64,000 nucleotides of DNA from IMGVR_UViG_3300027710_000011:62001-126000; one strand, 5' to 3'; shown: positions 12,119-50,207, numbered from the stretch's first letter. A program made the numbers and translations. Notes: a model not told the origin generated them from the letters alone.

Positions 12119-15100
12119 ATGCCTTCAAATACAACAAAACCATACGGCGGGTTAAGTCGTGACCGACTGACTCAGCTGATCAATGACTTCAACAACACGA
12201 ATCGCGTTGAAGGCGTAGATTTCATCTACGGCGTGCCGGTAGCACACACAGGTCCAAATGGTGAGAACACAAAGATCACCCTGACGCCTTTGCCGGACAC
12301 GATTTACGACGGTCCTGTGGACGTGCATTATTCGCGTCTGCGACTGAACGTTCTGGAGTTCTTGCCAGAAGGTTTCATTCGCGCTGCGGTGATCAAAGAC
12401 TTTCCTTTCTGGATCCACTCAGTCTTGCCGGAGATCAATGCCGCGTTGGGTCTGAATCTGGATGCATCGGAAGTCGTCAACACGCACTACGAAGGTCCTC
12501 AATCAACGTACCGTTTGGAAATCGTTCCAAGCGCTTCTGTTGCTTGGAGGCCGAGCTTCTATGATTTTCACGCCGTTCTCGGTGTGGAGCTCACAGATTC
12601 GTTCTTCACTGACATCGCAGATGGTTTCATCTGGAGCGGTAACGCGCTTGAAGACGTATTGCCGCGCGATTATCTGGAAGGCTTCGTTGCAGAAACCACG
12701 GAACTGAGTGTCGTCATTACTGGCGAAGTTGCGAATGGTTTTGCTCCGCGCGTAACACAGCTGTCTGAAATCATCCCTGTCAATAAGCTGGACGGTTTCG
12801 CTGCTGCGCTGTACGAACTCGAACGCGCTATTCCGACTGACAAGTTGGACGGCTTTGTTTTGACACCCGGTAAGCTTGAAGACCTGATTGGTCCCAAGGC
12901 CCTGGGCTTCGTGGCAGAAACATCACCTCTGGCTTCCTTCATTCCTGATGTAGCCGACGGCTTCGTTTGGACATTGTCGAGCCTGGCTGACTTCTTCCCC
13001 AGTAACGTGATGGGTGGCTTTGAGTTGACGCCTGGCGTTATCTCTAGCTTCTTCCCTGATAAGCTGGACGGCTTTGCCGCGACAACGACATCTCTGCATA
13101 CGTTGATCAACGATGTGGCTGACGGTTTCGATCGCTTCAGTACCAACCTGGGTACGCTGATTGCCGACAAGGCAGACGGTTTTGACCCTGTGTTCTTCTC
13201 GATTCCTTCGGCCTTCAACTCAGACATCCTGGACGGCTTTGTTGTTGCCGAACGTGAGTTGGGTGAGTTCTACCCTAGTAATGTCCTGGACGGCTTTGCT
13301 AAGTCCGAGAGTAACTTCGCTGGATTCTTCCCTAGCGACGTGGTAGATGGTTTCGTGTACACGCCTGGTGACTTGGCTGCTTTCTTTGCCAATAAGGCAG
13401 ACGGCTTTATCTGGACTGAGCGCGAGCTGGGCGAACTGATCGCTGACACTGCTGATGGATTCATTCGTCCTGAAGTAGAGTTGTCGACGCTGATCTACAA
13501 GGATCAAGCAGAAGGCTTCGTACCTAACACCACTGAACTGAGTGAAGTGATTGTTCAAGACGTTGCTACGGGCTTTGTTCGTACCGACAATGAACTGTCC
13601 AACCTGTTCACTGATGTAGCATCCGGTTTTGCGTTGACACCGCGCGAATTGAGCGAGTTGTTTGTTGATCAAGCATCTGGCTTCATCGTTAGCGATACCA
13701 ACCTGAGTGAAATTCTGGCTGACGTACTGAACGGTTTCGTACGTACCCCGACCTTGCTCGAACAAGTGATTTCTGACGTTGCCACTGGCTTCGATGCAAT
13801 CACTTACACACTGGAAGAGAAATTCAATTCAGACATCCTGAACGGTTTCGTTGAAACATTCAGTGACTTGGAACGTCTGATCGATGATTTCGCCAACGGT
13901 TTCGCTTATACGCCAATGCCACTTGGACAGATGTTCGGTGACATCGGTTTGGGCTTCGACATCGTTCCGACAAATCTGTCTGAACTGATTGGCGATGTCG
14001 CTACTGGTTTTGAAGTTCAAGATTCCACGATCGGGACGTTCTTCCAAGACGTCGCTGATGGCTTTGTCCTGACAGAAAACACACTGTCGGCAGTATTTGA
14101 AGACCAAGCCCTCGGGTTTGTTCCACAAACAACTGGTTTGACTGAAGTCATTCCTGGCCATGTGATGGGAGGTTTCTCGCCTTCGACTACAGAGCTGGCT
14201 GAGCTGATCGTTACTGATGTGGCTGACGGTTTCATTCCGCGCACAACAGCACTGGACGACTTGATTGCTAACGTCGCTTCTGGCTTCACGTTGACGGAGG
14301 GTGACCTCCAAGACTTGATTGCTACAGACGTGATGGATGGCTTCACGCCTGAGACCACTGAATTGTCCGTTCTGTTTGACGACGCTGCCAACGGCTTTGT
14401 TTACACAGAAGGCGACATTGGTCAGTTGATCACTGATACAGCAGATGGTTTTGTTTGGACAGCCTCTGACATCGCTGGATTCTTTAGCGATAGCGCAGAT
14501 GGTTTCGTTCTGACCGAAGGTAATCTGGCATCTCTGTTCGTGGACGCTGCCAACGGCTTCTCACGGACTGAATCCAGCCTGACTGTCTTCATCTCCGACC
14601 TCGCTGACGGTTTCACACCCGTTGTCGTGGCACTTTCGGACTTGATCGCAGATAAGGCAGATGGCTTTGCACCTTTCGAACCTGACCTGAATTCGTTGAT
14701 TGCTGACAAAGCTGATGGATTCGTACTGACACCTGGAGAGGTTGAAAACCTGTTCAGCGATGTAATGGACGGCTTCGTGCCTGAAACTACATTGATCGAT
14801 ACGCTGTTCGTTACTGATGTAGCACGCGGCTTCACAGCAGAGACATCTGCTCTAGGTACTTTCCTGCAAGACACAGCTGACGGTTTCGTTTGGACACCTA
14901 CCGATATTGATAGCAAGTTTGTATTCGATGTCGTTGAAGGTTTTGTCTGGACTGAATCCTCGCTGGACAGTTTCATCACTGCTGATGTACTCGATGGCTT
15001 TGTTGCAAGCGTAACTCCGCTTAGCGACATGGTGACCGCTGACGTGTTGGATGGGTTCATTGCTCAGACAACAGCTTTGTCAGAATTGATCAGTAACGTG

Positions 15101-16396
15101 GCGACGGGCTTTAGCCCTGAATCTACACCACTGAGCACTCTGATCACAGCAGACGTAGCGACGGGCTTCATTGTTAGCGAAACGGCTCTCAGCGAGATTA
15201 TCGTTGGTGAGACCGCTAACGGGTTCTCTGCACAGACTACAGCGCTCTCAGCGTTGATTACGGACGTCGCAGACGGCTTTGTGCGTGGTGAAAGTGAACT
15301 GACTAGCTTCATTGCCGACAAGGCAGATGGCTTCGTCTTTACACCTGGTCAGCTGGAAGTGCTGATTGGTAACGTTGCAACCGGTTTCGTACCGGAAACA
15401 ACTGACCTGTCTGCAATGATCGGTGACGTTGCAACCGGCTTCGTCTTTACGCCTGGTCTGATCAGTGATCTGTTTGTTGAGATTGCTGATGGCTTTGCTC
15501 CTGGTACTAGCGACATCGCTACGTTCTTTGCAGATGTTGCTGACGGCTTTGCTGTCGGCACAACGGTTCTGTCGACACTCATCGCTGATAAGGCCGATGG
15601 TTTCGTGGCGGCCGCAACTGATCTGTCAAGCTTGGTCGCAAACGTTGCTGACGGTTTCGTCTACACCGAGAACGACCTGACGAACGTGATCGCTGACAAG
15701 GCAGACGGGTTTGTTGCTGAAACAACAGACATTAATGGCTTGTTCGCTAGCAATGTGTTGGATGGCTTCGATAGCGTTCACACCACGATTGCCACAATGA
15801 TCTCTGACGTCGCTTCTGGCTTCGTCTGGAGTGAACGTGCTCTTAGCGAGCTGATTGTCCCTGATGTCCTGGACGGCTTCGACACTGGCGAGCAAACGCT
15901 CAATAGCGTGATTGCTGACAAGGTTGATGGCTTCCTGGCCACACCTGATGCAGACGGTCAATTGACTAACGCACTCTTCGTATTGCGTCCTGCAGATACA
16001 CAGTGGGCTGACGGTACCGTTATCGATGGTCGTATTGTTGAGAACATGCTTGTTCCAACCAGTCAAGATACGTGGGAAACTTTGCCCGCAACTTGGTCTG
16101 AATGGAATACGTGGCTGAGCAATCCGAACCCGATTGTCGAGTACGAAGAAGTAATTGACCTGGGTCAAGTCCGCACTGTTCGCTTGCGTGTTGATGCTGC
16201 TATCAATACAGCAACGACGGAAGGATGGGAAGCTAGGTACGTTACCAGCCTTGACGGAGTTGATTGGGGCAATGAAACATCGTGGCGTGATTTCCCAGGC
16301 AATAACGTAACAACGCGTTACGTGAAGGTCAAATGGGCCGCTCTCGGTACCTTCGCTACATTGTTGTCGCCAATGCTGACTGTTTACGAAAATTAA
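12119..16396 (+). CDS. Large virion structural / fibre-like protein with ~19-aa acidic tandem repeats
   Basis: 1425 aa; N-terminal domain with G..dvhY.Rl motif typical of phiKZ-like virion proteins; roughly 55-60 L..LI.D.A.GF repeats; distinct C-terminal domain. Confidence 0.75.
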   Translation: MPSNTTKPYGGLSRDRLTQLINDFNNTNRVEGVDFIYGVPVAHTGPNGENTKITLTPLPDTIYDGPVDVHYSRLRLNVLEFLPEGFIRAAVIKDFPFWIHSVLPEINAALGLNLDASEVVNTHYEGPQSTYRLEIVPSASVAWRPSFYDFHAVLGVELTDSFFTDIADGFIWSGNALEDVLPRDYLEGFVAETTELSVVITGEVANGFAPRVTQLSEIIPVNKLDGFAAALYELERAIPTDKLDGFVLTPGKLEDLIGPKALGFVAETSPLASFIPDVADGFVWTLSSLADFFPSNVMGGFELTPGVISSFFPDKLDGFAATTTSLHTLINDVADGFDRFSTNLGTLIADKADGFDPVFFSIPSAFNSDILDGFVVAERELGEFYPSNVLDGFAKSESNFAGFFPSDVVDGFVYTPGDLAAFFANKADGFIWTERELGELIADTADGFIRPEVELSTLIYKDQAEGFVPNTTELSEVIVQDVATGFVRTDNELSNLFTDVASGFALTPRELSELFVDQASGFIVSDTNLSEILADVLNGFVRTPTLLEQVISDVATGFDAITYTLEEKFNSDILNGFVETFSDLERLIDDFANGFAYTPMPLGQMFGDIGLGFDIVPTNLSELIGDVATGFEVQDSTIGTFFQDVADGFVLTENTLSAVFEDQALGFVPQTTGLTEVIPGHVMGGFSPSTTELAELIVTDVADGFIPRTTALDDLIANVASGFTLTEGDLQDLIATDVMDGFTPETTELSVLFDDAANGFVYTEGDIGQLITDTADGFVWTASDIAGFFSDSADGFVLTEGNLASLFVDAANGFSRTESSLTVFISDLADGFTPVVVALSDLIADKADGFAPFEPDLNSLIADKADGFVLTPGEVENLFSDVMDGFVPETTLIDTLFVTDVARGFTAETSALGTFLQDTADGFVWTPTDIDSKFVFDVVEGFVWTESSLDSFITADVLDGFVASVTPLSDMVTADVLDGFIAQTTALSELISNVATGFSPESTPLSTLITADVATGFIVSETALSEIIVGETANGFSAQTTALSALITDVADGFVRGESELTSFIADKADGFVFTPGQLEVLIGNVATGFVPETTDLSAMIGDVATGFVFTPGLISDLFVEIADGFAPGTSDIATFFADVADGFAVGTTVLSTLIADKADGFVAAATDLSSLVANVADGFVYTENDLTNVIADKADGFVAETTDINGLFASNVLDGFDSVHTTIATMISDVASGFVWSERALSELIVPDVLDGFDTGEQTLNSVIADKVDGFLATPDADGQLTNALFVLRPADTQWADGTVIDGRIVENMLVPTSQDTWETLPATWSEWNTWLSNPNPIVEYEEVIDLGQVRTVRLRVDAAINTATTEGWEARYVTSLDGVDWGNETSWRDFPGNNVTTRYVKVKWAALGTFATLLSPMLTVYEN
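12620..15940 (+). repeat. Degenerate ~57-nt (19-codon) coding tandem repeat
   Basis: GAC/GAT-GGN-TTY (D-G-F) recurs about every 57-60 nt. Confidence 0.85.
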
Positions 16397-16698: not shown

Positions 16699-17160
16699 AT
16701 GTCTGGTTTGCAAGTCGATCGCGCCAAGAGCGCTGACCAAAATATGCTGGCACTGATCCTGACCGCATCTTCGTTCGCCTTCACCGGCAGCGAATTCACG
16801 GTGGGCCCTGCTTCCGCACAAACTCCTGCTGATCCGCAAGAGAAGACCAACAGCCAAGTCACGCTGACCGCCGTCGCCAATTCCGGCTTCACCGGCACCA
16901 AGACCCTGCGCTACGCTCGCCTGGTCATCGGCCAAACTCGTCCCGGCGCCAAGGTGGCCTACGTGATCGGCGGCGCCGACACTCTGAGCACCCTGAAGTC
17001 CGCCATCGCTGTGGAACACAACCTGGTCGAGTCCGAGTTCGACATCACTGGTTCGTTGCCTGCTCAAGGCGCTGCTGCTGCCGTGTTCGCTGTGACCGCC
17101 GCCGGCGCCAGCAAGCTGTACACCGGCACCATCAACGTGTCCGTGACCTACCCTGCCTAA
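16699..17160 (+). CDS. Small virion structural protein
   Basis: Ala/Thr-rich, strongly C-ending codons; GTKTLRYARL motif like the N-terminus of 12119..16396. Confidence 0.7.
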   Translation: MSGLQVDRAKSADQNMLALILTASSFAFTGSEFTVGPASAQTPADPQEKTNSQVTLTAVANSGFTGTKTLRYARLVIGQTRPGAKVAYVIGGADTLSTLKSAIAVEHNLVESEFDITGSLPAQGAAAAVFAVTAAGASKLYTGTINVSVTYPA

Positions 17161-22902: not shown

Positions 22903-24939
22903 ATGGCTAACATTGTTACACGAGCCCTTGGCTTCGTGGATGTGTCTGAAGACGAGAAATACATCACAATCGGCGGTGTGAAGGCTGAGAATATCGGTAA
23001 GGACATTCTCCGCATGTGGGGAACGAATCGCATTGAGCAACACATGTTCAATGAGATTGGTGGACGCGTTATCAGGTTCCCAAAGTTCTTTGGTCCTGAG
23101 GTGCATTACATCCTCAGCAAGATTTTGAACAACAAGAAGGTCGTTACAAGTCGTGGAAGTATCAAGGACGCTTTGGCTCTCCTTGAACAAAACACTTGGA
23201 TGAAACGCATCACGCAAGAGTACGACCCTATTATTGATTTGGATGCCGTCAAGCTGTTCAATAAGACGCCGATGCCGCACCAGATTAATTTCTTCCAGAT
23301 GTATAGTCATCGTACGCAATCGTACGGACTGAACGGCTATCTCCTGTCCGCTGGCGCTGGCACTGGTAAGACACTGATGGCACTCATCTTGTCCGAAATG
23401 CTGCATGCTGACTACAAGGTGATTGTCTGTCCAAAGAATGCTGCTTACCGAGTGTGGGTAACTTCTTTGGCTGAAGAATACAAAGATCCTCGCAAGGCTT
23501 GGGTAATCGCAGACGGTAAGGCTTACGAAGGTCAGAAGTACATTGTCTGTCATTACGAAGGTTTGGAAAAGCTCAAGGCCATTGCTGGCCGCCTTTCCGG
23601 ACGCGTGATCATCCCGCTTGATGAGTCTCACAATTTGAACAGTGACGATTCCTTGCGGACTCAATACTTCATCGACATCTGTCGCTCCATCCGTAACGTA
23701 CACGTGCTGTGGATGTCGGGTACACCAGTGAAAGCTCTTGGGTACGAAAGCATTCCACTGTTGCGCTCCATTGATCCGCTCTTCACCGATGAAGTGGAAG
23801 CGCGGTTCAAGAAGATCTATGGGCGTGATGCCACAAAGGCTTTGGACATCTTGCGTCAACGTATCGGCATGATTTCTTTCCACGTGGAAAGCTCTGCGGT
23901 TGTGACAAATGAGACGACGACTCACAATCGGATGATCAGTATCCCGAACGGTAAGATATACACGTTGGATGCTGTGCGTACCGAGATGCAGAAGTTCATT
24001 GAAACTCGTCTGAAATTCTACTTGGGCGAGAGCAAGAGTTTCAAGAAAACTTATGAGCGAGCGCTTGATATCTACGAAGACACGATCAAGGATAATGGCC
24101 TGCTGTCTAAAGACAGTGAAGAACGTCGTGCATTCAAGACGTACAAGCGCTACATCGAGCTGATCTCTTCCGGCTTTGATCCAATGAGTATGGCTAAGGA
24201 AGCCAAGTATTGCAATCATTTCGAGAAGAACATCATTGCTCCTACTTTGCCAAAAGACTTGAAGAAGGCTTTCATGAGCGCCAAGTCTGTGGTGAAGTAT
24301 CCGCAGCTTAAGGTACTTGGTGAAGCACTCGGTGGTGTTCTGAGCAAGAAGCGTGTTCAATGTCACTTGGACATGATTCCGCATATGGGACTAGAAAAGA
24401 TCATCAACGCGGCTTCGAAGAAGACCATCATCTTCTCGAGTTACGTTGAGGTGGTGGATGCAATCACGAAGTACCTGAAGGGTAAGGGTTTCAATCCCAT
24501 TGCCGTACACGCAAGTAGTGGTCAGGAACTCTCAGCATCCGTTAACCAGTTCTTCAAAGATCCGAATCTCAATCCGTTGGTGGCGACTTTCCAATCGCTA
24601 TCGACAGCAGTTCCGATTATCTGCGCGAACTGTACTGTGTTCACGAACATGCCGTTCCGTGAATACGAGATTACACAAGCTCGTGCTCGCACGAATCGTT
24701 TGGGTCAAGATACTGCTGTTGAGTACTACAACACGTACCTTGACACTGGTAAAGAGCCCAACGTCTCCACCCGCTCACGTGACATCCTGGAATGGTCGCG
24801 CCAACAAGTTGCAGCCATCCTTGGCCAAGACTATGGCGGCACTATTACAGCTGAAATGGTGAACTCGATGGAGAGTTTGACAGAGGACTACACTCCTTTC
24901 GAGATCAGTCTCGCTATGGAGGAATACGCAGACTTTTAA
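22903..24939 (+). CDS. SNF2-like (SF2) helicase
   Basis: PMPHQ, SAGAGTGKT, VCPK, IPLDESH, MSGTP, IFSSY and QARARTNRLGQ motifs. Confidence 0.88.
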   Translation: MANIVTRALGFVDVSEDEKYITIGGVKAENIGKDILRMWGTNRIEQHMFNEIGGRVIRFPKFFGPEVHYILSKILNNKKVVTSRGSIKDALALLEQNTWMKRITQEYDPIIDLDAVKLFNKTPMPHQINFFQMYSHRTQSYGLNGYLLSAGAGTGKTLMALILSEMLHADYKVIVCPKNAAYRVWVTSLAEEYKDPRKAWVIADGKAYEGQKYIVCHYEGLEKLKAIAGRLSGRVIIPLDESHNLNSDDSLRTQYFIDICRSIRNVHVLWMSGTPVKALGYESIPLLRSIDPLFTDEVEARFKKIYGRDATKALDILRQRIGMISFHVESSAVVTNETTTHNRMISIPNGKIYTLDAVRTEMQKFIETRLKFYLGESKSFKKTYERALDIYEDTIKDNGLLSKDSEERRAFKTYKRYIELISSGFDPMSMAKEAKYCNHFEKNIIAPTLPKDLKKAFMSAKSVVKYPQLKVLGEALGGVLSKKRVQCHLDMIPHMGLEKIINAASKKTIIFSSYVEVVDAITKYLKGKGFNPIAVHASSGQELSASVNQFFKDPNLNPLVATFQSLSTAVPIICANCTVFTNMPFREYEITQARARTNRLGQDTAVEYYNTYLDTGKEPNVSTRSRDILEWSRQQVAAILGQDYGGTITAEMVNSMESLTEDYTPFEISLAMEEYADF

Positions 24940-24951
24940 ATAATCGAGGTC

Positions 24952-25254
24952 GTGATGGGAAATGGAACAGAACCTATGAAGGGGCGTCGTGCTCCTTTAA
25001 ACAAAGATGGTTTCTTTGAGAACTTTGGACAACCTGGAGACTATGGACGTATCAAGCGGACGCTCGAACAAGTCCATGGTTTACAGGATCAACTGTACTG
25101 GCAAGTGATTGCACCTGACGGTAGTAGCTGTAAGTTGAGTCCAGAGGTTCACGAAGTCCTTGAACACAAGGACGGTACCATTTCTGTCACACCTTCGATT
25201 GTCACAAAGAGCTGGCACGGCTGGTTGAAACATGGAATCTGGACTTCCGTGTAA
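24952..25254 (+). CDS. Small protein, DUF6527-like C-terminus
   Basis: GTISVTPSI...WHGWLKHGIW. Confidence 0.55.
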   Translation: MMGNGTEPMKGRRAPLNKDGFFENFGQPGDYGRIKRTLEQVHGLQDQLYWQVIAPDGSSCKLSPEVHEVLEHKDGTISVTPSIVTKSWHGWLKHGIWTSV

Positions 25255-25338
25255 TAACCATTATCTTGTGTGAACAAATGTCTAATTACTTGGAAGTAGC
25301 TAGATACGACCACCCTTCTACACGTCTCAGGAAACAAC

Positions 25339-27036
25339 ATGAAACATCTGCCGCAAATTCTCGCCCAACAGCGCGCTCAAGCCCAATTCGCCATCGCCGG
25401 CGTTCCGTCTTCGCAATTGAGCGTTGCTCAAGAAGGCATCGCTCAAGAAGGCTTCGTGGACGGCTTCAAGGACTTCTTCACGCACCAGGCCACCACGAGT
25501 GACTTGGCTATCGTGCGCAAGGCCGCTTCGACCATGGCTGAATACAAGGTCGGTCTGACTTCCACTCGTCAGTTCGTCAACAACAACAACATGGCAGCGC
25601 TGCGCTACCTGTTCAAAGAAGATCAGCTGACCGGCAACCTGGTGGGTGACATCAATCACGACGTCAAGACCGTCGGCATGGTCAACGACGTTCTGCGCAA
25701 CATCGTTGAACTGCTGAAGAAGTCCAAGCCTGAAGACCGCAACAACGAAATCGAGAACGGCCTGATCAGCGTCCTGAAGGAAGCACGTGTCCACCTGGAC
25801 GACGTCGCCATGCTGGGCAACTACTACTTCTCGTTCGGCGCCCGCGGCACCGGAGATATGCTTGGTAACCATATCGACGAAGACATCAAGGCGAAGCTTC
25901 GCTTGGGCAACAACCTCACCGAAGCTGCTGTCGGCCTGGTCTTCTACGCTCTGGACAAGAAGAAGGCCGACGGTCTCTTCCCCAAGATCAACGAGAAGAT
26001 GGACTTCGACCTGAACGCTTTCAAGTCGGCAACTACTGCCTACGCAAAAATGCTGGGCCAGTCGGCTGCTTTGATCGAAGAGTTCATTGGCGAATACAAG
26101 CGCAGCAAGCGTCACGACAGCAAGCACGTTCGTCACGTTCTGCGCTACGGCCACAACGTTTGCGGCGTGTTGGTCGCCATCGCTTCGGTGACTCAGCCTT
26201 TCCTGAACTACATGCGCTCGCAGCTGAAGACTGGCGACGTCGCCATGGAAGGCTTCACTGACTCCGTCAAGAACGGTGTCAATCTGCTGAAGAGCAAATT
26301 CTCGCCCAATGACGAGACGAAGGCCAAGGCACAGATCGAGGTCTTGACCAAGCTCAAAGACGACGCTGAGCAACTGAAGAAGTACATCTCTTCGGGCGCT
26401 GACATCAAGTCGACATCGGTCAAGTTGACGCAAGCTGCCAAGAACTTCCCGGTGAGCGCGCAGACGCCTGACGAGCTGGTGCGCAACTTGTCCGCTTGGC
26501 GCAAGCAGACGGCTGCTGAGGTGACACGCATCTCCAAACTGACCGACAAGGCTGAAGTGGAATCCGCCATCGCCAAGATGAAGGAACAAGCCAAGGTCAA
26601 GGGCAAGATCGCTGACAACATGGTCTTCACGAAGGACGCGTGCTTGAAGCTGCTGTCGGAGATGATCGCATTGATCGATCTGAGCGTTCAGACCTGCAAG
26701 CGCAGTCTGGAGTTGAAGACGGAAGCCGGCGAAGTCAAGCCAAGCATGGAATCCATGTACATCGCCATGGAAAGCATGGAGATGACCATCGCTATGGAAG
26801 GCTTCTGGTCGAAAGTATTCGGCTACTACCTGCTGATCACCGGCTATGCCAGCTGGTTCTACGCCATCATCGTCGCTTGCTGGACTGTGTTCATGATCCT
26901 CACTGGTGCCGGTGTGTTCGCAGTACTGTTTACCGCAGGCGCTGCTGGCGTCAACTGGTTCCTCGGCAGCTTGTTTGTCGAAGCCGGTCGCAAGATGATC
27001 GACGACAACCAGGACGATGGCGAATATCGTTCCTAA
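25339..27036 (+). CDS. Internal head (ejected) protein with multiple A/S-x-E protease sites and hydrophobic C-terminus
   Basis: AQE-G twice, AME-G twice, SME/AME cluster; highly biased codons; C-terminal TM-like helices. Confidence 0.75.
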   Translation: MKHLPQILAQQRAQAQFAIAGVPSSQLSVAQEGIAQEGFVDGFKDFFTHQATTSDLAIVRKAASTMAEYKVGLTSTRQFVNNNNMAALRYLFKEDQLTGNLVGDINHDVKTVGMVNDVLRNIVELLKKSKPEDRNNEIENGLISVLKEARVHLDDVAMLGNYYFSFGARGTGDMLGNHIDEDIKAKLRLGNNLTEAAVGLVFYALDKKKADGLFPKINEKMDFDLNAFKSATTAYAKMLGQSAALIEEFIGEYKRSKRHDSKHVRHVLRYGHNVCGVLVAIASVTQPFLNYMRSQLKTGDVAMEGFTDSVKNGVNLLKSKFSPNDETKAKAQIEVLTKLKDDAEQLKKYISSGADIKSTSVKLTQAAKNFPVSAQTPDELVRNLSAWRKQTAAEVTRISKLTDKAEVESAIAKMKEQAKVKGKIADNMVFTKDACLKLLSEMIALIDLSVQTCKRSLELKTEAGEVKPSMESMYIAMESMEMTIAMEGFWSKVFGYYLLITGYASWFYAIIVACWTVFMILTGAGVFAVLFTAGAAGVNWFLGSLFVEAGRKMIDDNQDDGEYRS

Positions 27037-27109
27037 GTTCTTCTGAACTGTTAAAAGACCGAGTGGAAACACTCGGTCTTTTAATTTGTCACACAACAGG
27101 AAACAAAAT

Positions 27110-27955
27110 ATGGGTACCAATACTCAAACGCTTGTGTTGCCAACGCAGCAAGAAGCTATTGCCATGGAAGGTATCAAAGACACGCTCAAAGATGCCTGGG
27201 GCGCTCTGGTGAAGAAGTTCAATCCTACGGACCATGAAGCAATCATGGCTCGTATGGAAAAGCTCTCGAAAGTTCGTGTTGACCTTATCAAGCTGAAACA
27301 ACAAATCAGCATGGGTAAGGACGACGGTCAGGTGACTGCGAACATCACGCGCTTTACTGCACACTTGCCTGTGACGGCCGATACAGGTGAGCAGCTTGTC
27401 AAAGAGCTGGCTATGCAGCGTAAACGCATTCATGCCGTGGTTGTGGCTGCCGAGCATGCAAACACGCCGGAATCCATCAAGACGGTTCGGGAGCAAATGC
27501 TCTTGGAGCTCTCAAAGAAAGGCAACGTCTCCAAAGACATCATCTTCACCAAGAAGGTGATTCTGCAAGTGCTGGATGAAACCATCGCTTTGCTGGATGT
27601 TGTTAAGGACGCGGGTGGTGCGTACAACAAGTGCCACGAGAAAGCCAAGACTTCTGGAAGCTTGGCTACAGAGTCCTACCTCAACGGCCTGGCTTTGGAA
27701 AGCTATGAAGATACGCTGGAAATAGCCCTAGAAGGCCTTGTGAGCGCCATCGTTGGCCTGACTGCACTCCTGGCCTCTATCACTGCTCGCGTGATGATGT
27801 ACTTCGCCTGGGTGATGGCAATTGGCGCTCTTCTGACCGGACAGTTCGCTGCAGCCTTTGGTTTGTTTATCGCTGCTGAAGTTCTGGAATGGATCAGTCA
27901 AGCTGGTCTGAATTATTCCAATGTCCAGCTGAACGGCGGTGAAGAAGAGCATTGA
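27110..27955 (+). CDS. Internal head protein paralogous to the second half of 25339..27036
   Basis: IAME-G, ATE, ALE-S, ALE-G sites; alignable domain; hydrophobic tail. Confidence 0.75.
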   Translation: MGTNTQTLVLPTQQEAIAMEGIKDTLKDAWGALVKKFNPTDHEAIMARMEKLSKVRVDLIKLKQQISMGKDDGQVTANITRFTAHLPVTADTGEQLVKELAMQRKRIHAVVVAAEHANTPESIKTVREQMLLELSKKGNVSKDIIFTKKVILQVLDETIALLDVVKDAGGAYNKCHEKAKTSGSLATESYLNGLALESYEDTLEIALEGLVSAIVGLTALLASITARVMMYFAWVMAIGALLTGQFAAAFGLFIAAEVLEWISQAGLNYSNVQLNGGEEEH

Positions 27956-27974: not shown

Positions 27975-28007
27975 GCGAGTAAATGGGCTAAAAACCCATT
28001 TACTCGT
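27975..28007 (+). terminator. Terminator hairpin
   Basis: GCGAGTAAATGGG-ctaaaaa-CCCATTTACTCGT. Confidence 0.7.
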
Positions 28008-28174: not shown

Positions 28175-30793
28175 ATGTTGTCTATCCTAATTAAGCGCGA
28201 CGGAACTCGCGAACCATTGATGGCAGAAAAAGTCAATGGGTGGGGTGAATGGGCGGCCGCTAATCTCGGAGATACCGTAGATTGGACTGCCGGCGTTATG
28301 AGTGCTGTGGCTTCTTTGCCCGAAGTTGCCCATAGCCAAGACTTGCAGCACGCTTTGATTCGTTACTTCTTGAATCTGGGCACGTCTGGTGGTCAGCGCA
28401 TGGCAGGACGTCTGTATGCGGCGACGGTCCACAAAGACATGTTCGGCAAAGCCTACATGCCGACGATTTGGAACGTGCATCAGCAGCTGCTCAACGCCGG
28501 CTTTATGGTCAAGCTGGATTACTCGGATGAAGAATACGCCGAGTTGCAAAGCGTGATCGATCATGAGCGCGATTTCGACTACATGCACACCCAGCTGTAT
28601 CAAATCCGCTACAAGTACTCGCTGCGCAACCAACTGACGGGTACTGAATACGAAAGCCCTCAATTCGTGTTCATGCGTATGGCCATGGCTTTGGCTGAAG
28701 ACCAACCAAAGCATCGTCGTATGAAGGATGCGAAGAAGTGGTACAACTACTTCTCCCTGAACAAGATCAACGCTCCGACGCCGAACTACACCAATCTGGG
28801 CACCAAGCTCAACGGTTACGCTTCGTGCTGTCTGTACACCGTTGATGACACTGCTGACTCTTTGGCAGTGGGCGACCACATTGCGTACAAGATGACTGTC
28901 ATGTCGGCCGGCATTGGCAACATCTTGATGACTCGCTCCATTCTGGATCCCGTGCGCGGTGGTTTGTTCAAGCATCGCGGCAAGCTGCCTTACCTGCGCT
29001 CCATGCAAGGCGCAGTCACTGCCAACGTGAAGAACGGCCGCAACGGCGCATGCACATCGTCCTTCGTGGCGTTCGATCCTGAGATCGATACGTTGCAGCA
29101 GTTGAAGAATCCCATGACGGTTTCTGACAAACAAATCCGCGGGATGGATTACAACATGCAAGGCAACAAGTTCCTTGGTCGCAAAGCAGCTGCCAATGAA
29201 GATGTGTTCTTGTTCAACATCTTCACGGCTCCTGACCTCTTTGCCGCTTTCTACGGCAAGGATCTGAACAAGTTCATCGAGCTGTACAACAAGTACGAAG
29301 CCGATCCGAACTTCAAGAAGGTTTACAAGTCCGCTCGTGAGATCATCATCAATACCGAGAACGAGGCTTACGAAACCGGCCGTGCGTACTTGTCCTTCAT
29401 GGACGAGATCAACTACCACACGCCGTACAAGGATCCGATCAACACATCCAACTTGTGTGTTGAAATCACGGAACCCACGCACGCGTACCAGAACATGATT
29501 GATCTGTACACCAACGGCCCAGTTGGTTACATCGAGATTCGTGTGATTGGCAGCGATGAGCCGATGCGCATGAAAGCCCCTGACGCCGTGTATCTGGTTG
29601 ATCACGAAGAATGGGAAGCTGCGCAGAACCTGATTCCTGGCGTGATGTTCCGTAAGCTCGGCGAAGATCGTGTTTACACGGTGACCGAGATTATCGACGT
29701 CAAGAAAGAACCTGAAGTGGCCATGTGCTCTTTGGGTGCCATCGTCAAACCCAATGTGACTGACGACGAATACGAGGACGTGATGTATTACACGCTCCTC
29801 ATGATCGACAAGTGCATTCACAAGTCCGATTACCCGCTGGCTCACGTCGGCTACACCGCCAAGGCTCGTATGGCTGCCGGTGTGGGGATCATGAGTTTGG
29901 CTCACCATCTGGCGAAGCTGGGTCTGGACTATACCGGCGAAGCTGGTAAGCGTGAAATCCACAAGGTGTTCGAAACGCACATGTACTACGCTATCCGTGC
30001 TTCTTTGAAGCTGGGTAAAGAGCTGGGCAATGCACCGTGGATCCACCGTACCAAGTGGGCTGAAGGTTGGGTTCCTACTCATACGGCCAACAAGCGTGTT
30101 CAGGAGATCGTTCCTGGCGGCTTTGTCAAGCAGTACGACTGGGATGCGCTGAGCAAAGAGATCAAGGCTAACGGCGGTATCCGCAACTCTGCCTTGGTTG
30201 CACACATGCCTGGCGAATCCAGCTCCAAAGCGTCTGGTGGTCTGAACAGCGTGTACCCTGCACGCGATACGTCCCTCATCAAGACGGACAACGACATCAC
30301 GACGTACTGGACTGTTCCGGACAGCAGCTTGTATTACCAACCGGCATGGGAAGTTCCGACCAAGGACATGATCGAAGATTACTCGATCATGCAACTTTGG
30401 ACCGACCAAGCTATCTCGGCAGACGAATATCGCAAGATCGAAGGTGCTGAGAAGGTCGGCACCGATGAGATGTTGCAGAACTACTTCCTTCGTTGCAAGT
30501 ACGGCCAGAAGACTCGTTACTACATGAACACCAAGACTTCCAAAGCGGTCAAGCTCGATCGCGCAGAAACTGCGTGTGGTGTAGAAACGAGTACCAGTGG
30601 CGTTCATGTGGAGAACATGATTGCTGAGTCCAAAGAAAACTGGAACGGCGGTCCTGTTCATGAAGGCTGGGCAAGTAACGATGCTCCTGCGCCGGACATC
30701 GCGCATCGTCCACCGACAATTAGTAGCGGTGACGATAGCGTCTACAACACAGAAGCTTCGGCTGGCTGCGAAGGCGGCTTCTGCAGTCTGTAA
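28175..30793 (+). CDS. nrdA: Ribonucleotide reductase class Ia alpha subunit
   Basis: PTP, YASCCLY, SNLCVE, AMCSLG, GVGIMS, HMPGESSS, KTRYY and C-terminal CEGGFC. Confidence 0.96.
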   Translation: MLSILIKRDGTREPLMAEKVNGWGEWAAANLGDTVDWTAGVMSAVASLPEVAHSQDLQHALIRYFLNLGTSGGQRMAGRLYAATVHKDMFGKAYMPTIWNVHQQLLNAGFMVKLDYSDEEYAELQSVIDHERDFDYMHTQLYQIRYKYSLRNQLTGTEYESPQFVFMRMAMALAEDQPKHRRMKDAKKWYNYFSLNKINAPTPNYTNLGTKLNGYASCCLYTVDDTADSLAVGDHIAYKMTVMSAGIGNILMTRSILDPVRGGLFKHRGKLPYLRSMQGAVTANVKNGRNGACTSSFVAFDPEIDTLQQLKNPMTVSDKQIRGMDYNMQGNKFLGRKAAANEDVFLFNIFTAPDLFAAFYGKDLNKFIELYNKYEADPNFKKVYKSAREIIINTENEAYETGRAYLSFMDEINYHTPYKDPINTSNLCVEITEPTHAYQNMIDLYTNGPVGYIEIRVIGSDEPMRMKAPDAVYLVDHEEWEAAQNLIPGVMFRKLGEDRVYTVTEIIDVKKEPEVAMCSLGAIVKPNVTDDEYEDVMYYTLLMIDKCIHKSDYPLAHVGYTAKARMAAGVGIMSLAHHLAKLGLDYTGEAGKREIHKVFETHMYYAIRASLKLGKELGNAPWIHRTKWAEGWVPTHTANKRVQEIVPGGFVKQYDWDALSKEIKANGGIRNSALVAHMPGESSSKASGGLNSVYPARDTSLIKTDNDITTYWTVPDSSLYYQPAWEVPTKDMIEDYSIMQLWTDQAISADEYRKIEGAEKVGTDEMLQNYFLRCKYGQKTRYYMNTKTSKAVKLDRAETACGVETSTSGVHVENMIAESKENWNGGPVHEGWASNDAPAPDIAHRPPTISSGDDSVYNTEASAGCEGGFCSL

Positions 30794-30841
30794 CCAACCG
30801 GGAGGGCCTGAGTGCCCTCCCACCTCTGAGATACCACAAGC

Positions 30842-41010: not shown

Positions 41011-41472
41011 TTACTTGGGAGCGGCCAAGTTGTAGGCGTTTTCCCACATCTCGCCGCGTGCTTTGTACGCATTGAGTTTTTCTTGAACGGCGTTACCGCG
41101 TTCCCAGACTTTGAGATCGTCCGAATAGCCGTAATGCCAGTCATGGCCGGCGAGCATGGTCAAGAAGTCGAGGAACTCGGGATCCAGGGAATCCAAGTAC
41201 TTGTCAATCAACTTGTCCGTACGTGTTGGCTCCAACAGCCGGTCAGCGTGCTGGCGACCGCGTTCCATGAGAACTTGCATATAGGTGTCACCACCCGCCC
41301 ACGCAATGGGGAACAAAAAGTTGGCTTCGTAATCTTGCGCTCGGACGTAGCGCTCCATATCGCGAGGTTCCAAAGGTTCTTTGAAGTTCGCGATCTCGTA
41401 ACTGAAGTGATGACTGCGTACGTGACTGCGGAAATCATCCAGGGACATCAGTTCGTTTTGCTTGTAGCGCAT
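41011..41472 (-). CDS. Hypothetical phage protein
   Basis: C-terminal MLAGHDWHYGYSDD..VWERG motif; start MRYKQ after GGAGG. Confidence 0.7.
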   Translation of the reverse strand: MRYKQNELMSLDDFRSHVRSHHFSYEIANFKEPLEPRDMERYVRAQDYEANFLFPIAWAGGDTYMQVLMERGRQHADRLLEPTRTDKLIDKYLDSLDPEFLDFLTMLAGHDWHYGYSDDLKVWERGNAVQEKLNAYKARGEMWENAYNLAAPK

Positions 41473-41531
41473 GCTACCTCCTGATATTCTCCGCACCTAC
41501 ATAGGTACGGAGGCTCGTGTAAAAATGGTTG

Positions 41532-41879
41532 TTAGATGACGGTGAAGTTGGCGACAGCGTCTTCAGCCTTCTTCACGTCTTCCTTGGCGCTATCCAGGCC
41601 TTCCATCATGCAATCCAAACGCATTTTTGCCAAGGCAAGGTTGGCGAACTCGCCTCGGGCCAAAGCTTCTTGAACCTTTTCCACACCGCCGTTGGCTTGG
41701 ACGAAATTGTGGATGTTGGCTTCGAGAGTACGGACGGCGGCATCGACATTTTCCAAAACGACCTTGCCGCGCTGAAGAAGGATAATTGCTTCGCCGAACT
41801 TATCGGCTTGTTCCGTAGCCTTGGCTTGAAGACCCTGGCGCAGAGTTTCCACATTCAGTTTGTTGGCTGCTGTGTTCAT
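41532..41879 (-). CDS. Coiled-coil hypothetical protein
   Basis: Helical heptad pattern. Confidence 0.7.
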   Translation of the reverse strand: MNTAANKLNVETLRQGLQAKATEQADKFGEAIILLQRGKVVLENVDAAVRTLEANIHNFVQANGGVEKVQEALARGEFANLALAKMRLDCMMEGLDSAKEDVKKAEDAVANFTVI

Positions 41880-41929
41880 GATTTGTTTTTCCTAAAAAAG
41901 AAGTTAATGGGATTCGCTCTGACATGATG

Positions 41930-42334
41930 TCAGTACTTGCGACGAAACTTGGGTTTGGGTTGAAAGACGTTGTCGGTGTTCCAGGCCACAACTGGTGTGG
42001 AAGGGATATCAATATCCTTCATGAGATGGATGATGACTTTACCATTGCTGTAAATAAAAGCGGGCTCGGTCTTCATCTCATAAAGTGCAATATCTTCGGC
42101 TGTCTCAGCATAGATGCAAATCAGCACCATTAAACCAGCCGACTCGTCATTAATGTAGAAAAACCAACACTTACCCTCGCTGTTCTCGGTCTTGCCCACA
42201 TGGTTGACAGAGTTCAAGTAATCACGTGAACCCGACGCAGTGATGATCAAGGCGATCTGCTCATCGTTCAACGGCTTATGCACCGTCACGTTTTTGAGAT
42301 GGCCCTTTTCGTTGTAGAGAACTTGGATTTTCAT
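41930..42334 (-). CDS. Hypothetical protein
   Basis: Start set at MKIQV just after the upstream stop. Confidence 0.6.
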   Translation of the reverse strand: MKIQVLYNEKGHLKNVTVHKPLNDEQIALIITASGSRDYLNSVNHVGKTENSEGKCWFFYINDESAGLMVLICIYAETAEDIALYEMKTEPAFIYSNGKVIIHLMKDIDIPSTPVVAWNTDNVFQPKPKFRRKY

Positions 42335-42338
42335 GATT

Positions 42339-42689
42339 TCAAAGGCTGTCGCCGAAGAGTTTGTACACCTGCGGCGCAATATCAGGGAAACCACCAACGG
42401 CCTTGGCCAAATCAACCACATCAGTCTCACTGAGGTTGAAACGTTGCCCAAGTTTTTGGTGACGAAACGCATCAATACGTTTTTGCAAAGTTTGCAAATA
42501 CATGTTGGTCGCACGCGGGATAGGCGAGCCATCTTCGTTATCGATACGAATGCCGTTGCTGTCAATAACAACAAACGCGCAGTCCTGATCGTGAGCCGGG
42601 TTGTTCCACAGCTGAACAAATGCGCCGGTGACATGGTCAACACCAAAAGCGATCGTGCACACTTGACCTACGATTTCTTTACGAGACAT
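42339..42689 (-). CDS. Hypothetical protein
   Basis: ORF with RBS. Confidence 0.7.
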   Translation of the reverse strand: MSRKEIVGQVCTIAFGVDHVTGAFVQLWNNPAHDQDCAFVVIDSNGIRIDNEDGSPIPRATNMYLQTLQKRIDAFRHQKLGQRFNLSETDVVDLAKAVGGFPDIAPQVYKLFGDSL

Positions 42690-50132: not shown

Positions 50133-50207
50133 TGGTGCCGGATATCTGGATCGAACAGATGACCTACCGCTTACAAGGCGGTTGCTCTACCACTGAGCTA
50201 AGCCGGC
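50133..50207 (-). tRNA. tRNA-Thr(UGU)
   Basis: Full cloverleaf GCCGGCTTAGCTCAGTGGTAGAGC...CTTGTAA...TTCGATC...GGCACCA with encoded CCA. Confidence 0.95.

What the first reader, a model, noticed from the sequence alone, without database searches (positions are those of the whole stretch)
25339..27955. Head polyproteins whose A-x-E cleavage clusters would liberate membrane-spanning peptides
Seen: the 565-aa protein has AQE/G sites near its N-terminus, AME/G mid-protein and an SME-AME-SME-AME/G cluster before a ~78-aa hydrophobic tail. The 281-aa neighbour is homologous to its second domain and has ATE-ALE-ALE/G before a similar tail. Known: phiKZ gp175 and T4 gp21 cleave after S/A/G-x-E, and phiKZ-like phages eject head proteins and form an early membrane vesicle. 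Inference: these are polyproteins yielding soluble domains plus small two-helix membrane peptides for DNA translocation or vesicle formation.
Basis: partly seen in the sequence, partly recalled or inferred. Interest (0 to 1): 0.65.

Follow-up and report, generated by a model that had tools for sequence, protein, structure and literature searches.

The report
Protease-cut jumbo-phage proteins with hydrophobic tails
Two neighbouring genes of an uncultivated nucleus-forming jumbo phage encode a new, unannotated family of proteins that carry the cutting signal of the phage's head-maturation protease at every domain boundary, so that cutting would free a small hydrophobic two-helix peptide, a candidate membrane-inserting cargo of the phage head.

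Summary
The 565-aa (25339-27036) and 281-aa (27110-27955) proteins are paralogues (E 9e-25). Together they hold 9 of the genome's 21 copies of [VIL]-A-x-E-[GS]-hydrophobic (1.6 expected). Eleven of the other 12 lie in the phiKZ-type capsid protein, a portal-like protein, internal head proteins, other families conserved in such phages, and the S80 head protease itself. The genome (276.8 kb) also encodes chimallin.

A profile search of 1.84 billion proteins found only 28 clusters, all metagenomic and unnamed. Across 34 modules the only invariant residues are the two glutamates before the predicted cuts. The linker holding the pre-tail cuts is modelled as disordered, yet is the best-conserved segment in most comparisons.

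The 565-aa protein is a fusion of two proteins encoded separately in relatives, with a site kept at the junction. Other members are tandem modules. Folding predicts amphipathic helices sheltering a hydrophobic hairpin, also when the two are given as separate chains (0.80 against 0.01).

That these are polyprotein substrates of the head protease is well supported, though only in silico. That the freed peptides act in DNA entry or vesicle formation is untested. A membrane tether cut to release the procapsid is a serious rival.

The parts
22903..24939 (+). SNF2-type helicase, first gene of the co-oriented gene run. It is the ortholog of phiKZ gp203, which is annotated as a virion protein in phiKZ and Erwinia phage RAY.
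   Evidence: 37% identity over the full length to phiKZ gp203, E 6e-157. Pfam SNF2-rel_dom, Helicase_C and ResIII; phrog_62. Record annotations.
24952..25254 (+). 100-aa ORF kept between the helicase and the module genes in two relatives. Function unknown.
   Evidence: Orthologous 99-aa and 97-aa genes at the same place in L006 and L007. Weak DUF6527 match, E 0.0027, below the cut-off.
25339..27036 (+). Gene of the 565-aa polyprotein P0001 = leader + domain X + module (helical domain, cleavage cluster, hydrophobic tail).
   Evidence: (coding strand).
25339..25449 (+). N-terminal 'MKH' leader (aa 1-37) ending in the tandem sites VAQE32|G and IAQE37|G. Predicted targeting and cleaved propeptide.
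   Evidence: The same MKH[LM] leader plus A-x-E|G heads the stand-alone domain-X proteins P0041-43 and most modules. It is the only protein of this proteome that starts in this way.
25450..26250 (+). Domain X (aa 38-304), a soluble cargo domain of unknown function that ends at VAME304|G.
   Evidence: Stand-alone homologues of 285-286 aa (39-45% identity, E down to 4e-65) carry their own leader and end just before the linker that leads into the VAME|G site of P0001. In one relative it is a separate gene between the helicase and a module gene. No Pfam family, no usable Atlas hit.
26251..26742 (+). Amphipathic helical domain of the P0001 module (aa 305-468).
   Evidence: Aligns to P0002 21-185.
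26743..26799 (+). Cleavage cluster of P0001 (aa 469-487): SME471, AME478, SME481, AME487|G.
   Evidence: The aligned Glu is invariant in 34 of 34 modules.
26800..27033 (+). 78-aa hydrophobic tail of P0001 (aa 488-565): about 55 hydrophobic residues rich in Gly, Ala and aromatics, a TG turn, then an acidic C-terminus.
27053..27082 (+). Stem-loop (AAAAGACCGAG ... CTCGGTCTTTT) between the two genes. Terminator-like or attenuating.
   Evidence: Read directly from the sequence. The consensus scan did not list it.
27110..27955 (+). Gene of the 281-aa module protein P0002.
27110..27169 (+). Leader of P0002 (aa 1-20) ending in IAME20|G.
   Evidence: pLDDT below 50 for residues 1-19.
27170..27664 (+). 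Amphipathic helical domain of P0002 (aa 21-185).
   Evidence: AlphaFold2 with 34 sequences: block-mean pLDDT 80-95 over residues 41-180. One hydrophobic face of its helices contacts the tail.
27665..27733 (+). Linker with the cleavage cluster of P0002 (aa 186-208): ATE188|S, ALE197|S, ALE208|G.
   Evidence: pLDDT below 50 for 185-199, yet the best-conserved region in most family comparisons. E188 invariant.
27734..27952 (+). 73-aa hydrophobic tail of P0002 (aa 209-281). Predicted helical hairpin (helices 195-242 and 246-275) with an acidic C-terminus.
27976..28006 (.). Perfect 14-bp stem-loop just after the P0002 stop codon.

Best explanation
P0001 and P0002 belong to a small, unannotated family of head-targeted precursor proteins of chimallivirus-like jumbo phages. 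These precursors are processed by the phage's S80 (phiKZ gp175-type) prohead protease.

Anatomy of a module:
- a short N-terminal 'MKH' leader;
- a hydrophobic-A/S-x-E|G site;
- an amphipathic helical domain of about 165 aa;
- a conserved, flexible linker with one to four A/S-x-E sites;
- a hydrophobic helical hairpin of about 55 aa with an acidic end.

Proposed course, all steps inferred:
1. The precursor folds as a soluble 'inside-out' bundle in which the amphipathic helices shelter the hairpin.
2. The leader takes it into the procapsid, as the capsid-targeting sequence does for T4 internal proteins.
3. The protease removes the leader, separates fused cargo (domain X in P0001, second modules in other phages) and nicks the linker. 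The hairpin peptide of 68-78 aa is then held only non-covalently.
4. On infection the pieces leave with the DNA, and the freed hairpin can insert into the host inner membrane or the early infection vesicle made from it.

My confidence differs by step. That these are protease substrates and polyproteins: about 0.85. That the hairpin is delivered to, and acts in, the membrane of the newly infected cell: about 0.4.
For: Protease present:
- G000:C1:232757-233473(-) is 35% identical to phiKZ gp175, E 2e-35.
- It matches Pfam Peptidase_S80 at E 1e-76.

Lineage:
- Chimallin homolog.
- phiKZ-type capsid protein PF25620 and PF12699 internal head proteins.
- DUF7941 proteins.

Motif:
- 21 copies against about 1.6 expected, 9 of them in these two proteins.
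- The other 12 lie as follows: two in the capsid protein just before its Pfam domain starts; one each in the portal-like phrog_3004 protein at residue 304, three PF12699 proteins (the third a sub-threshold match), phrog_3239, two phrog_32764 paralogues, phrog_3229 and the protease C-terminus; and one false positive in the thymidylate kinase P-loop.

Family:
- Only 28 clusters in 1.84 billion proteins.
- All members show leader, site, helical domain, Glu site and hydrophobic tail.
- E20 and E188 are the only invariant columns among 34 modules of 17-94% identity.
- P3 is A, S or G in 32 of 33 (first site) and 32 of 34 (second site).
- The linker is modelled as disordered yet is the most conserved segment in most comparisons.

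Polyprotein logic:
- P0001 equals a stand-alone leader+domain-X protein (P0041-43) fused to a module, with a site at the joint.
- The L006 relative has the module as a separate 291-aa gene.
- P0011 and P0019 are tandem modules joined by a site.

Soluble sheltered state:
- AlphaFold2 mean pLDDT 77, pTM 0.69.
- The helical domain and the tail given as separate chains score ipSAE 0.80 against a best control of 0.01. The three runs share at least 73% of contacts and the partner pLDDT is at least 72. That mark was reached by 58 of 80 solved complexes and 2 of 110 mismatched pairs; these counts hold only roughly because my own alignment was used.
- Interface residues of the helical domain are hydrophobic (mean KD +0.94 against -1.03 for the rest).

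Context:
- The genes follow the ortholog of the virion helicase gp203.
- That slot holds virion proteins in phiKZ (gp202, gp201) and Goslar (gp161).

Precedent:
- SPN3US gp47 is a processed, essential ejection-protein candidate with a transmembrane helix right after its maturation site (PMC5694885).
- Proteins injected with the DNA are found at the early infection vesicle (10.64898/2026.04.21.720040).
Against: - There is no experimental datum. The phage is known only from metagenomes, and no RNA run holds the stretch.
- No homolog was found in any cultivated phage. phiKZ and Goslar lack the architecture.
- The complex test joined two halves of one polypeptide, so a pass mainly says that they form one fold.
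- A hydrophobic stretch this long could instead be inserted into the producer cell's membrane, above all the internal hairpin of tandem members. That would hinder packaging.
- Tail sequence diverges as fast as, or faster than, the soluble domain, which suits a generic membrane anchor as well as a channel.
- No late-promoter signal could be defined.
Confidence: 0.5

Rival explanations
1. Membrane tether of the procapsid. The hairpin anchors the protein in the inner membrane of the producing cell, and the leader and helical domain bind the nascent procapsid core or portal. When the prohead protease fires, the cuts next to the membrane sever the tether and release the procapsid for transport to the phage nucleus. 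The hairpin stays behind in the membrane.
For: [quoted passage not shown]
- T4 proheads are released from the membrane at the gp21 cleavage step (as summarised in PMC5694885).
- The invariant, redundant cuts lie 0-31 residues before the hydrophobic block.
- K/R residues on both flanks and an even number of passes put all soluble parts in the cytoplasm.
- Tail sequence is conserved mainly in hydrophobicity.
Against: - Such a core function should be universal, but the family has 28 clusters and is absent from phiKZ and Goslar.
- Copy number varies from one to two, and the genes lie in a variable slot.
- The same leader also heads domain X, which has no anchor.
- The hairpin is predicted to be sheltered in a soluble bundle.
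- The protease works inside the shell, so juxtamembrane sites would be reachable only through an open vertex.
Confidence: 0.22
2. Disposable core or scaffold protein. The helical modules help build the procapsid interior, like T4 gp22, gp67 and gp68. They are then cut into pieces that leave the head. The hydrophobic end serves self-association rather than membrane insertion.
For: - The fold is all-helical, with K/E-rich helices of about 280 aa, cut at both ends and at several sites.
- No scaffold counterpart has been confirmed in giant phages (PMC5694885).
- Multiple sites in one stretch are typical of fragments that are to be cleared (PMC5694885).
Against: - No cuts are predicted inside the 165-aa helical domain, which would stay too large to escape.
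- The family is rare and variable in copy number.
- A 55-residue stretch with Kyte-Doolittle means up to 3.2 is far more hydrophobic than any known scaffold end.
Confidence: 0.1
3. These are not head proteins at all. They are tail-anchored membrane proteins of the infected cell (for example exclusion, lysis timing or vesicle or nucleus biogenesis), whose A-x-E-G motifs are structural or are read by something other than the prohead protease.
For: - The genes lie beside nucleotide-metabolism genes (ribonucleotide reductase), not in the head gene cluster.
- No virion data exist.
- The complex prediction cannot tell a packaged from a cytoplasmic protein.
Against: - The six-residue motif is otherwise confined almost entirely to head proteins and the protease itself.
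- The P1 Glu residues are the only invariant positions, and they sit in flexible regions.
- Fusions keep sites at domain joints.
- The upstream helicase is a virion protein in relatives.
- The early-promoter-like motif of this genome is absent upstream of these genes.
Confidence: 0.08

Closest known systems
SPN3US gp47 (positional counterparts phiKZ gp86 and 201phi2-1 gp148)
   Same: A head protein of a phiKZ-like phage, cut by the prohead protease at A-x-E sites, with a predicted transmembrane helix directly after the maturation site. It is an essential ejection-protein candidate and evolves fast (PMC5694885). The P0002 model's joint-best structural match (Z 8.9, shared with the vinculin tail domain) is phiKZ gp86, with 205 residues aligned.
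   Different: - No sequence relation: hhalign probability 0.2% to gp86.
- Z 8.9 lies within the noise for helical bundles.
- gp47 has a propeptide of about 111 aa and one helix at the N-terminus of the mature protein, not a C-terminal hairpin set free as its own peptide.
- The locus differs: the head-gene cluster against the slot after the virion helicase.
- gp86 is a fixed inner-vertex capsid protein (PMC11297242).
T4 internal proteins (IPI-III, Alt) with capsid-targeting sequence
   Same: A short conserved N-terminal leader shared by unrelated cargo proteins. It is cut off after a Glu by the prohead protease, and the cargo leaves with the DNA (as summarised in PMC5694885). Here the MKH leader heads both domain X and the modules.
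   Different: - The protease family differs (T4 gp21 against S80), as does the motif. That T4 gp21 cuts after L/I-x-E is my own knowledge.
- The sequences are unrelated.
- T4 internal proteins have no hydrophobic segments and are not polyproteins.
phiKZ-type internal head ('inner body') proteins, Pfam PF12699
   Same: Multi-site processing by gp175 at S/A/G-x-E. They are high-copy head contents that are injected and found at the early infection vesicle (PMC11297242; 10.64898/2026.04.21.720040). This genome's own PF12699 proteins carry the same extended motif.
   Different: P0001 and P0002 have no PF12699 domain. PF12699 proteins lack a hydrophobic hairpin.
Maturation-cleaved membrane-active peptides of non-enveloped animal viruses (nodavirus gamma peptide, picornavirus VP4, reovirus mu1N, adenovirus protein VI)
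   Same: The logic is the same: a capsid-internal precursor is cut during maturation, so that a small hydrophobic or amphipathic peptide is held non-covalently and released at entry to act on a membrane. This comparison rests on my own knowledge of these systems and was not tested here.
   Different: Different viruses, folds and proteases. The resemblance is one of mechanism only.
Alpha-helical pore formers with a buried hydrophobic hairpin (colicin pore domain, ClyA family)
   Same: Predicted amphipathic helices wrap a hydrophobic helical hairpin in the soluble state. ClyA, NheA and AhlC appear among the weak Foldseek rows.
   Different: No significant fold or sequence match: best Foldseek E 0.07, TM 0.14-0.23, and PDB profile search E above 0.004. 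No activity is known.

Membership tests
Substrates of a phiKZ gp175-type (MEROPS/Pfam S80) prohead protease | The same genome encodes the protease | tested here: met
   35% identity to phiKZ gp175, E 2e-35. PF20034 Peptidase_S80, E 1e-76, 257 bits against a cut-off of 23.4.
Substrates of a phiKZ gp175-type (MEROPS/Pfam S80) prohead protease | S/A/G-x-E sites placed at propeptide and domain boundaries in accessible regions | tested here: met
   Sites at aa 32, 37, 304 and 471-487 of P0001 and at 20, 188, 197 and 208 of P0002. The leader and linker have pLDDT below 50. The sites coincide with fusion joints.
Substrates of a phiKZ gp175-type (MEROPS/Pfam S80) prohead protease | The site motif is shared with bona fide head proteins of the same phage and is rare elsewhere | tested here: met
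   21 copies against 1.56 expected. Outside these two proteins the copies lie in the capsid protein, the portal-like protein, PF12699 proteins, three further PHROG families and the protease itself, with one false positive.
Substrates of a phiKZ gp175-type (MEROPS/Pfam S80) prohead protease | Cleavage products with new N-termini after Glu detected in virions or procapsids | not testable with these tools
   The phage is uncultivated. It is known only from metagenome DNA runs, with no RNA or proteome data.
phiKZ internal head proteins (PF12699) | PF12699 domain | tested here: not met
   No PF12699 match in P0001 or P0002 at E up to 1. The genome's true PF12699 proteins score E 9e-26 and 2e-18.
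SPN3US gp47 / phiKZ gp86 group | Sequence or fold relation to gp86, and position in the head-gene cluster | tested here: inconclusive
   Profile comparison probability 0.2%. Structural Z 8.9, rmsd 5.5 over 205 residues, below the level that is meaningful for helical bundles. The genomic position differs. The gp47 sequence itself was not compared.
T4-type capsid-targeted internal proteins | A conserved N-terminal leader shared by unrelated cargo and removed at a Glu site | tested here: met
   The MKH[LM] leader plus A-x-E|G heads both the domain-X proteins and the modules. This is a likeness of design, not homology. Targeting itself cannot be tested here.
Alpha-helical pore-forming proteins (colicin / ClyA type) | Recognisable fold or sequence match; a hydrophobic hairpin buried in amphipathic helices | tested here: inconclusive
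   A buried hairpin is predicted, but there is no significant match in the PDB by Foldseek, VIA-align or profile search.
Chimalliviridae-like (nucleus-forming) jumbo phage, as host genome of the genes | Chimallin, phiKZ-type capsid protein, S80 protease, DUF7941 proteins | tested here: met
   Chimallin homolog at 26% identity over residues 18-600 of 626, E 4e-32. PF25620 at E 3e-181. S80 protease. DUF7941 twice in the window.

The most novel reading that the evidence does not exclude
The freed hairpin peptides of 68-78 aa are the first phage-encoded membrane components of the early phage infection vesicle. They would be packed in the head as protease-nicked, self-chaperoned bundles and injected with the DNA. 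[quoted passage not shown] This would be a bacteriophage counterpart of the maturation-primed lytic peptides of non-enveloped animal viruses.
Probability: 0.15. Interest if true: 0.85.

Novelty: new variant of a known kind. Interest (0 to 1): 0.62.

Why it matters
Nucleus-forming jumbo phages inject their DNA into a lipid vesicle. How that vesicle forms is unknown, and so are its channels (PMC12908238). Their capsids assemble on the inner membrane by unknown tethers. No phage membrane protein has been tied to either step, and a full-text search for papers linking the vesicle with injected transmembrane proteins found only one, a general review of anti-phage defence systems.

This family gives concrete candidates. 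They have a clear, testable design: defined cut sites, a defined peptide, and a soluble carrier domain.

The work also gives a general recipe. A phage's own extended protease motif, learned from its capsid and internal proteins, can pick out unannotated head cargo. Gene fusions and fissions that keep a site at the joint can confirm polyprotein processing without proteomics.

Tried and rejected
Searches that found nothing:
- Megablast and tblastn of both proteins, and of two distant family members, against 50,697 phage records: no match.
- Pfam, PHROGs and NCBIfam: nothing above cut-off. The sub-threshold rows are Sol_i_2 (25.2 bits against 26), DUF3915 and XcbC, which I take as chance.
- IMG/VR scan with the family alignment: no relative.
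- ESM Atlas: no usable hit for domain X.
- No names or accessions for ten family clusters.
- Foldseek against the PDB: nothing at E up to 0.001. PDB profile search: nothing meaningful.

Ideas dropped:
- I looked for a counterpart in the genes that follow the virion helicase. By eye, phiKZ gp201 and gp202, LucasX gp179 and gp178 and RAY gp130 are unrelated. Only the idea of a variable 'virion-protein slot' survives.
- Homology to phiKZ gp86 is rejected by profile comparison. The structural match (Z 8.9) is too weak for a helical protein.
- A scan of phiKZ (first 265 kb) and of the whole Goslar genome for a C-terminal hydrophobic block of 40 aa or more preceded by A/S/G-x-E sites found nothing comparable. 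Goslar gp85 has two membrane helices but no leader or site cluster.

Expression timing:
- A strong early-promoter-like motif (ACATATCAC, 17 copies, all on the minus strand, one upstream of chimallin) is absent from this gene run.
- No late-promoter motif could be extracted; T-rich terminators dominate the k-mer lists.
- The sigma-70 scan is at the level of shuffled sequence.
- No RNA run holds the stretch.

Other points:
- The antisense 597-aa ORF is rejected by the codon model and by protein-level homology of the + frame.
- Only genetic code 11 was used.
Full report
WHERE THE WINDOW LIES. The window is bases 62001-126000 of a 276,772-bp virus record that CheckV rates as complete. The genome encodes:
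- a homolog of the phiKZ nuclear-shell protein chimallin (26% identity over residues 18-600 of 626, E 4e-32);
- a phiKZ-type major capsid protein (PF25620, E 3e-181);
- PF12699 internal head proteins;
- two DUF7941 proteins inside the window. A recent preprint reports that domain only from chimalliviruses (10.64898/2026.04.21.720040);
- a head maturation protease of the phiKZ gp175 type (35% identity, E 2e-35; Pfam Peptidase_S80, E 1e-76).

It is therefore a nucleus-forming, phiKZ-like jumbo phage. It is known only from metagenomes: the source is a subsurface sample, and small shares of its words occur in sediment, freshwater, wastewater and soil runs.

THE OBSERVATION. The two ORFs are real and lie on the + strand.
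- P0001 is 565 aa (25339-27036).
- P0002 is 281 aa (27110-27955). Its ATG follows the same AGGAAACA ribosome site as P0001.
- A codon model selects the P0001 frame over a slightly longer antisense ORF.
- P0002 aligns to P0001 301-540 (29% identity, E 9e-25), and the alignment begins exactly at AMEG in both.
- After the last site come tails of 78 and 73 residues, whose first 55 or so residues are strongly hydrophobic.

IS IT MORE THAN CHANCE? Bare A-x-E-G is not enriched in the proteome (32 found, 27 expected). The sites in these proteins, however, share a longer pattern: [VIL]-A-[MQLIVT]-E-[GS]-hydrophobic.
- That pattern occurs 21 times in the 263 predicted proteins. The mean of 2000 within-protein shuffles is 1.56 and the maximum is 9.
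- Nine copies are in P0001 and P0002, against a shuffle mean of 0.029.
- The other twelve are telling:
  - two in the capsid protein, at residues 58 and 80, just before its Pfam domain starts at residue 99;
  - one at residue 304 of the 965-aa portal-like virion protein. SPN3US and phiKZ portals lose long propeptides (PMC5694885);
  - one in each of three PF12699 internal head proteins, the third being only a sub-threshold Pfam match;
  - four in three further PHROG families conserved in such phages (phrog_3239, the two phrog_32764 paralogues, phrog_3229);
  - one near the C-terminus of the protease itself, which autoprocesses in related phages (PMC5694885);
  - one false positive in the P-loop of thymidylate kinase.

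The pattern is thus the extended recognition site of this phage's S80 protease. It refines the S/A/G-x-E rule reported for phiKZ and the A-x-E rule for SPN3US (PMC5694885). P0001 and P0002 are its densest carriers.

THE FAMILY.
- Word-based searches found four homologues of P0002 and none of full-length P0001.
- A profile search of 1.84 billion representative proteins found 28 clusters. Ten were looked up and carry no name; almost all of those come from metagenome assemblies.
- tblastn of both window proteins and of two distant members found no homologue in the 50,697 phage records, and a scan of IMG/VR found no relative.
- Every member shows the same order: an N-terminus that is mostly MKH/MKF/MKY, one or two sites at residues 15-49, a helical domain of about 165 aa, one to four Glu sites, and a hydrophobic block that starts 0-31 residues later.
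- In an alignment of 34 modules (17-94% identical to P0002), the only invariant columns are E20 and E188, the P1 residues of the first and pre-tail sites. G21 is nearly invariant.
- Position by position: P4 is I, V or L in 31 of 33 at the first site and 25 of 34 at the second. P3 is A, S or G in 32 of 33 and 32 of 34. P1' is G in 31 of 34 at the first site and S, G or A in 27 of 34 at the second. P2' is hydrophobic.
- The linker that holds the pre-tail sites is modelled as disordered (pLDDT below 50). Yet it is the best-conserved region in most comparisons. Against P0007 it is 84% identical, with 56% for the helical domain and 50% for the tail. Against P0009 the figures are 58%, 26% and 20%. 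A conserved flexible linker is what a recognition site looks like.

POLYPROTEIN LOGIC FROM COMPARATIVE GENOMICS.
- Residues 38-304 of P0001 (domain X) occur elsewhere as stand-alone proteins of 285-286 aa. These have their own MKH leader and A-x-E|G sites, and they end just before the linker that leads into the VAME|G site of P0001.
- In one relative the order is helicase, domain-X gene, module gene, ribonucleotide reductase.
- In a 271-kb relative the first gene is a 291-aa module with its own leader.
- In a 277-kb relative there is a single module.
- P0001 is therefore a fusion of two separately targeted proteins, with a cleavage site kept at the joint.
- P0011 (572 aa) and P0019 (499 aa) are two complete modules in tandem, tails included, again joined by a site.
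- This is the strongest argument, short of proteomics, that the sites are cut and that the mature products, not the precursors, are what matters.
- The tandem members also argue for an even number of membrane passes per tail. Otherwise the second module would lie on the other side of the membrane.

STRUCTURE.
- AlphaFold2 with the 34-sequence alignment gives mean pLDDT 77 and pTM 0.69. It models a confident helical domain (block-mean pLDDT 80-95 over residues 41-180), a disordered leader and linker, and two long helices, 195-242 and 246-275.
- Given as two chains, the helical domain (21-188) and the tail (209-281) dock with ipSAE 0.80, against 0.01 for the best of three controls. The runs share at least 73% of contacts and the partner pLDDT is at least 72. 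The tool's calibration is 58 of 80 true and 2 of 110 mismatched pairs, and it holds only roughly here because my own alignment was used.
- The contacting residues of the helical domain form hydrophobic stripes (mean KD +0.94 against -1.03; charged fraction 17% against 37%).
- Because the two pieces come from one polypeptide, this mainly shows that they form one fold: amphipathic helices sheltering a hydrophobic hairpin. That is the design of soluble, insertion-competent helical proteins.
- No solved structure matches significantly. Foldseek's best E is 0.07, with ClyA-family rows among the weak ones. VIA-align's best Z is 8.9, shared by the vinculin tail domain and phiKZ gp86, below the level that means anything for helical bundles. 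Profile comparison with gp86 is negative.

CONTEXT.
- The genes follow the ortholog of phiKZ gp203 (37% identity, E 6e-157). That SNF2 helicase is annotated as virion-associated in phiKZ and RAY.
- The slot after this helicase is variable, but it holds virion proteins in phiKZ (gp202, gp201) and Goslar (gp161, a DUF7941 protein) (10.64898/2026.04.21.720040).
- A motif that looks like this phage's early promoter is absent upstream of these genes. It has 17 copies of ACATATCAC, all on the minus strand, one before chimallin.
- I could not define a late promoter.

MECHANISM.
Shown by computation:
- the motif is the protease's site;
- these proteins are its densest carriers;
- the sites sit at leader, domain and tail boundaries;
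- the tail is a hydrophobic hairpin predicted to pack into the helical domain.

Inferred:
- the leader targets the precursor to the procapsid, by analogy with the T4 capsid-targeting sequence;
- the protease removes the leader, separates cargo and nicks the linker;
- the nicked bundle is kept in the head and ejected;
- the hairpin then inserts into the inner membrane or the early infection vesicle made from it.

The closest precedent is SPN3US gp47. It is a processed, essential ejection-protein candidate whose mature form starts with a transmembrane helix (PMC5694885).

The main rival uses the same anatomy differently. Chimallivirus capsids assemble on the inner membrane (PMC12908238), and a membrane-anchored protein cut next to its anchor would release the procapsid. 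Four points count against that rival: the rarity and variable copy number of the family, the anchor-less domain X that uses the same leader, the predicted soluble state, and the problem of reaching juxtamembrane sites from inside a shell. In its favour, the tail is conserved mostly in hydrophobicity.

Two weaker rivals are a disposable scaffold and a non-head membrane protein.

NOVELTY AND VERDICT. The kind is known: head proteins of phiKZ-like phages processed by the gp175-type protease, some of them ejected. The variant is new:
- an unannotated family;
- a shared short leader;
- a polyprotein organisation;
- a C-terminal hydrophobic hairpin set free as its own peptide.

Neither phiKZ (first 265 kb) nor Goslar has a comparable protein.

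My confidence is about 0.85 that these are protease-processed polyproteins of the head. It is about 0.4 that the hairpins act on the membrane of the newly infected cell, and about 0.15 that they are components of the early infection vesicle.

Noticed in passing
window about 835, 22806, 34655, 49117 and 59166 (all minus strand); 12 more in G000 outside the window: An exact 9-mer, ACATATCAC, preceded by a conserved tcta...tttt stretch, occurs 17 times in the genome, always on the minus strand. Most copies lie within about 190 bp upstream of a gene, and one lies before the chimallin homolog. It is probably the early (virion RNA polymerase) promoter of this phage.
   Followed up: partly
window 12119-16396 (+) and 16699-17160 (+): Two proteins with an N-terminal DUF7941 module (1425 aa and 153 aa). 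The Goslar preprint reports that domain only in chimalliviruses and in abundant virion proteins.
   Followed up: partly
window 24952-25254 (+): A 100-aa ORF kept between the virion helicase and the module genes in two relatives (99 and 97 aa). It has a weak, sub-threshold DUF6527 match. Its function and any link to the modules are unknown.
   Followed up: partly
window 25327-27120 (-) and 28187-30823 (-): Very long antisense ORFs (597 and 878 aa) lie opposite P0001 and the ribonucleotide reductase large subunit. The codon model favours the + strand frames, so these look like artefacts of codon bias that could mislead gene callers.
   Followed up: yes
L007:11244-11771 (relative of the window phage): A 175-aa Cys-rich ORF is inserted between the module gene and ribonucleotide reductase in one relative only. 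By eye it resembles an HNH/AP2-type homing endonuclease.
   Followed up: no
G000:C1:270-1112 (+), outside the window: A 280-aa protein with six copies of ATAAEGV[LI], spaced 18 or 36 residues apart. It accounts for 6 of the 32 A-x-E-G matches in the proteome and is unrelated to the cleavage motif.
   Followed up: no
G000:C1:166521-167873 (-) and 41418-42605 (-), outside the window: A 450-aa protein inside the internal-head-protein cluster has a 38-residue hydrophobic segment (306-343). A 395-aa protein next to the capsid gene has a C-terminal membrane helix. Both are possible counterparts of SPN3US gp47-like membrane-active head proteins.
   Followed up: no
window 27053-27082 and 27976-28006: Each of the two genes is followed by a strong stem-loop. 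The first lies between the paralogues and could set their relative expression.
   Followed up: partly
window 50133-50207 (-): A single tRNA-Thr (anticodon TGT) gene.
   Followed up: no
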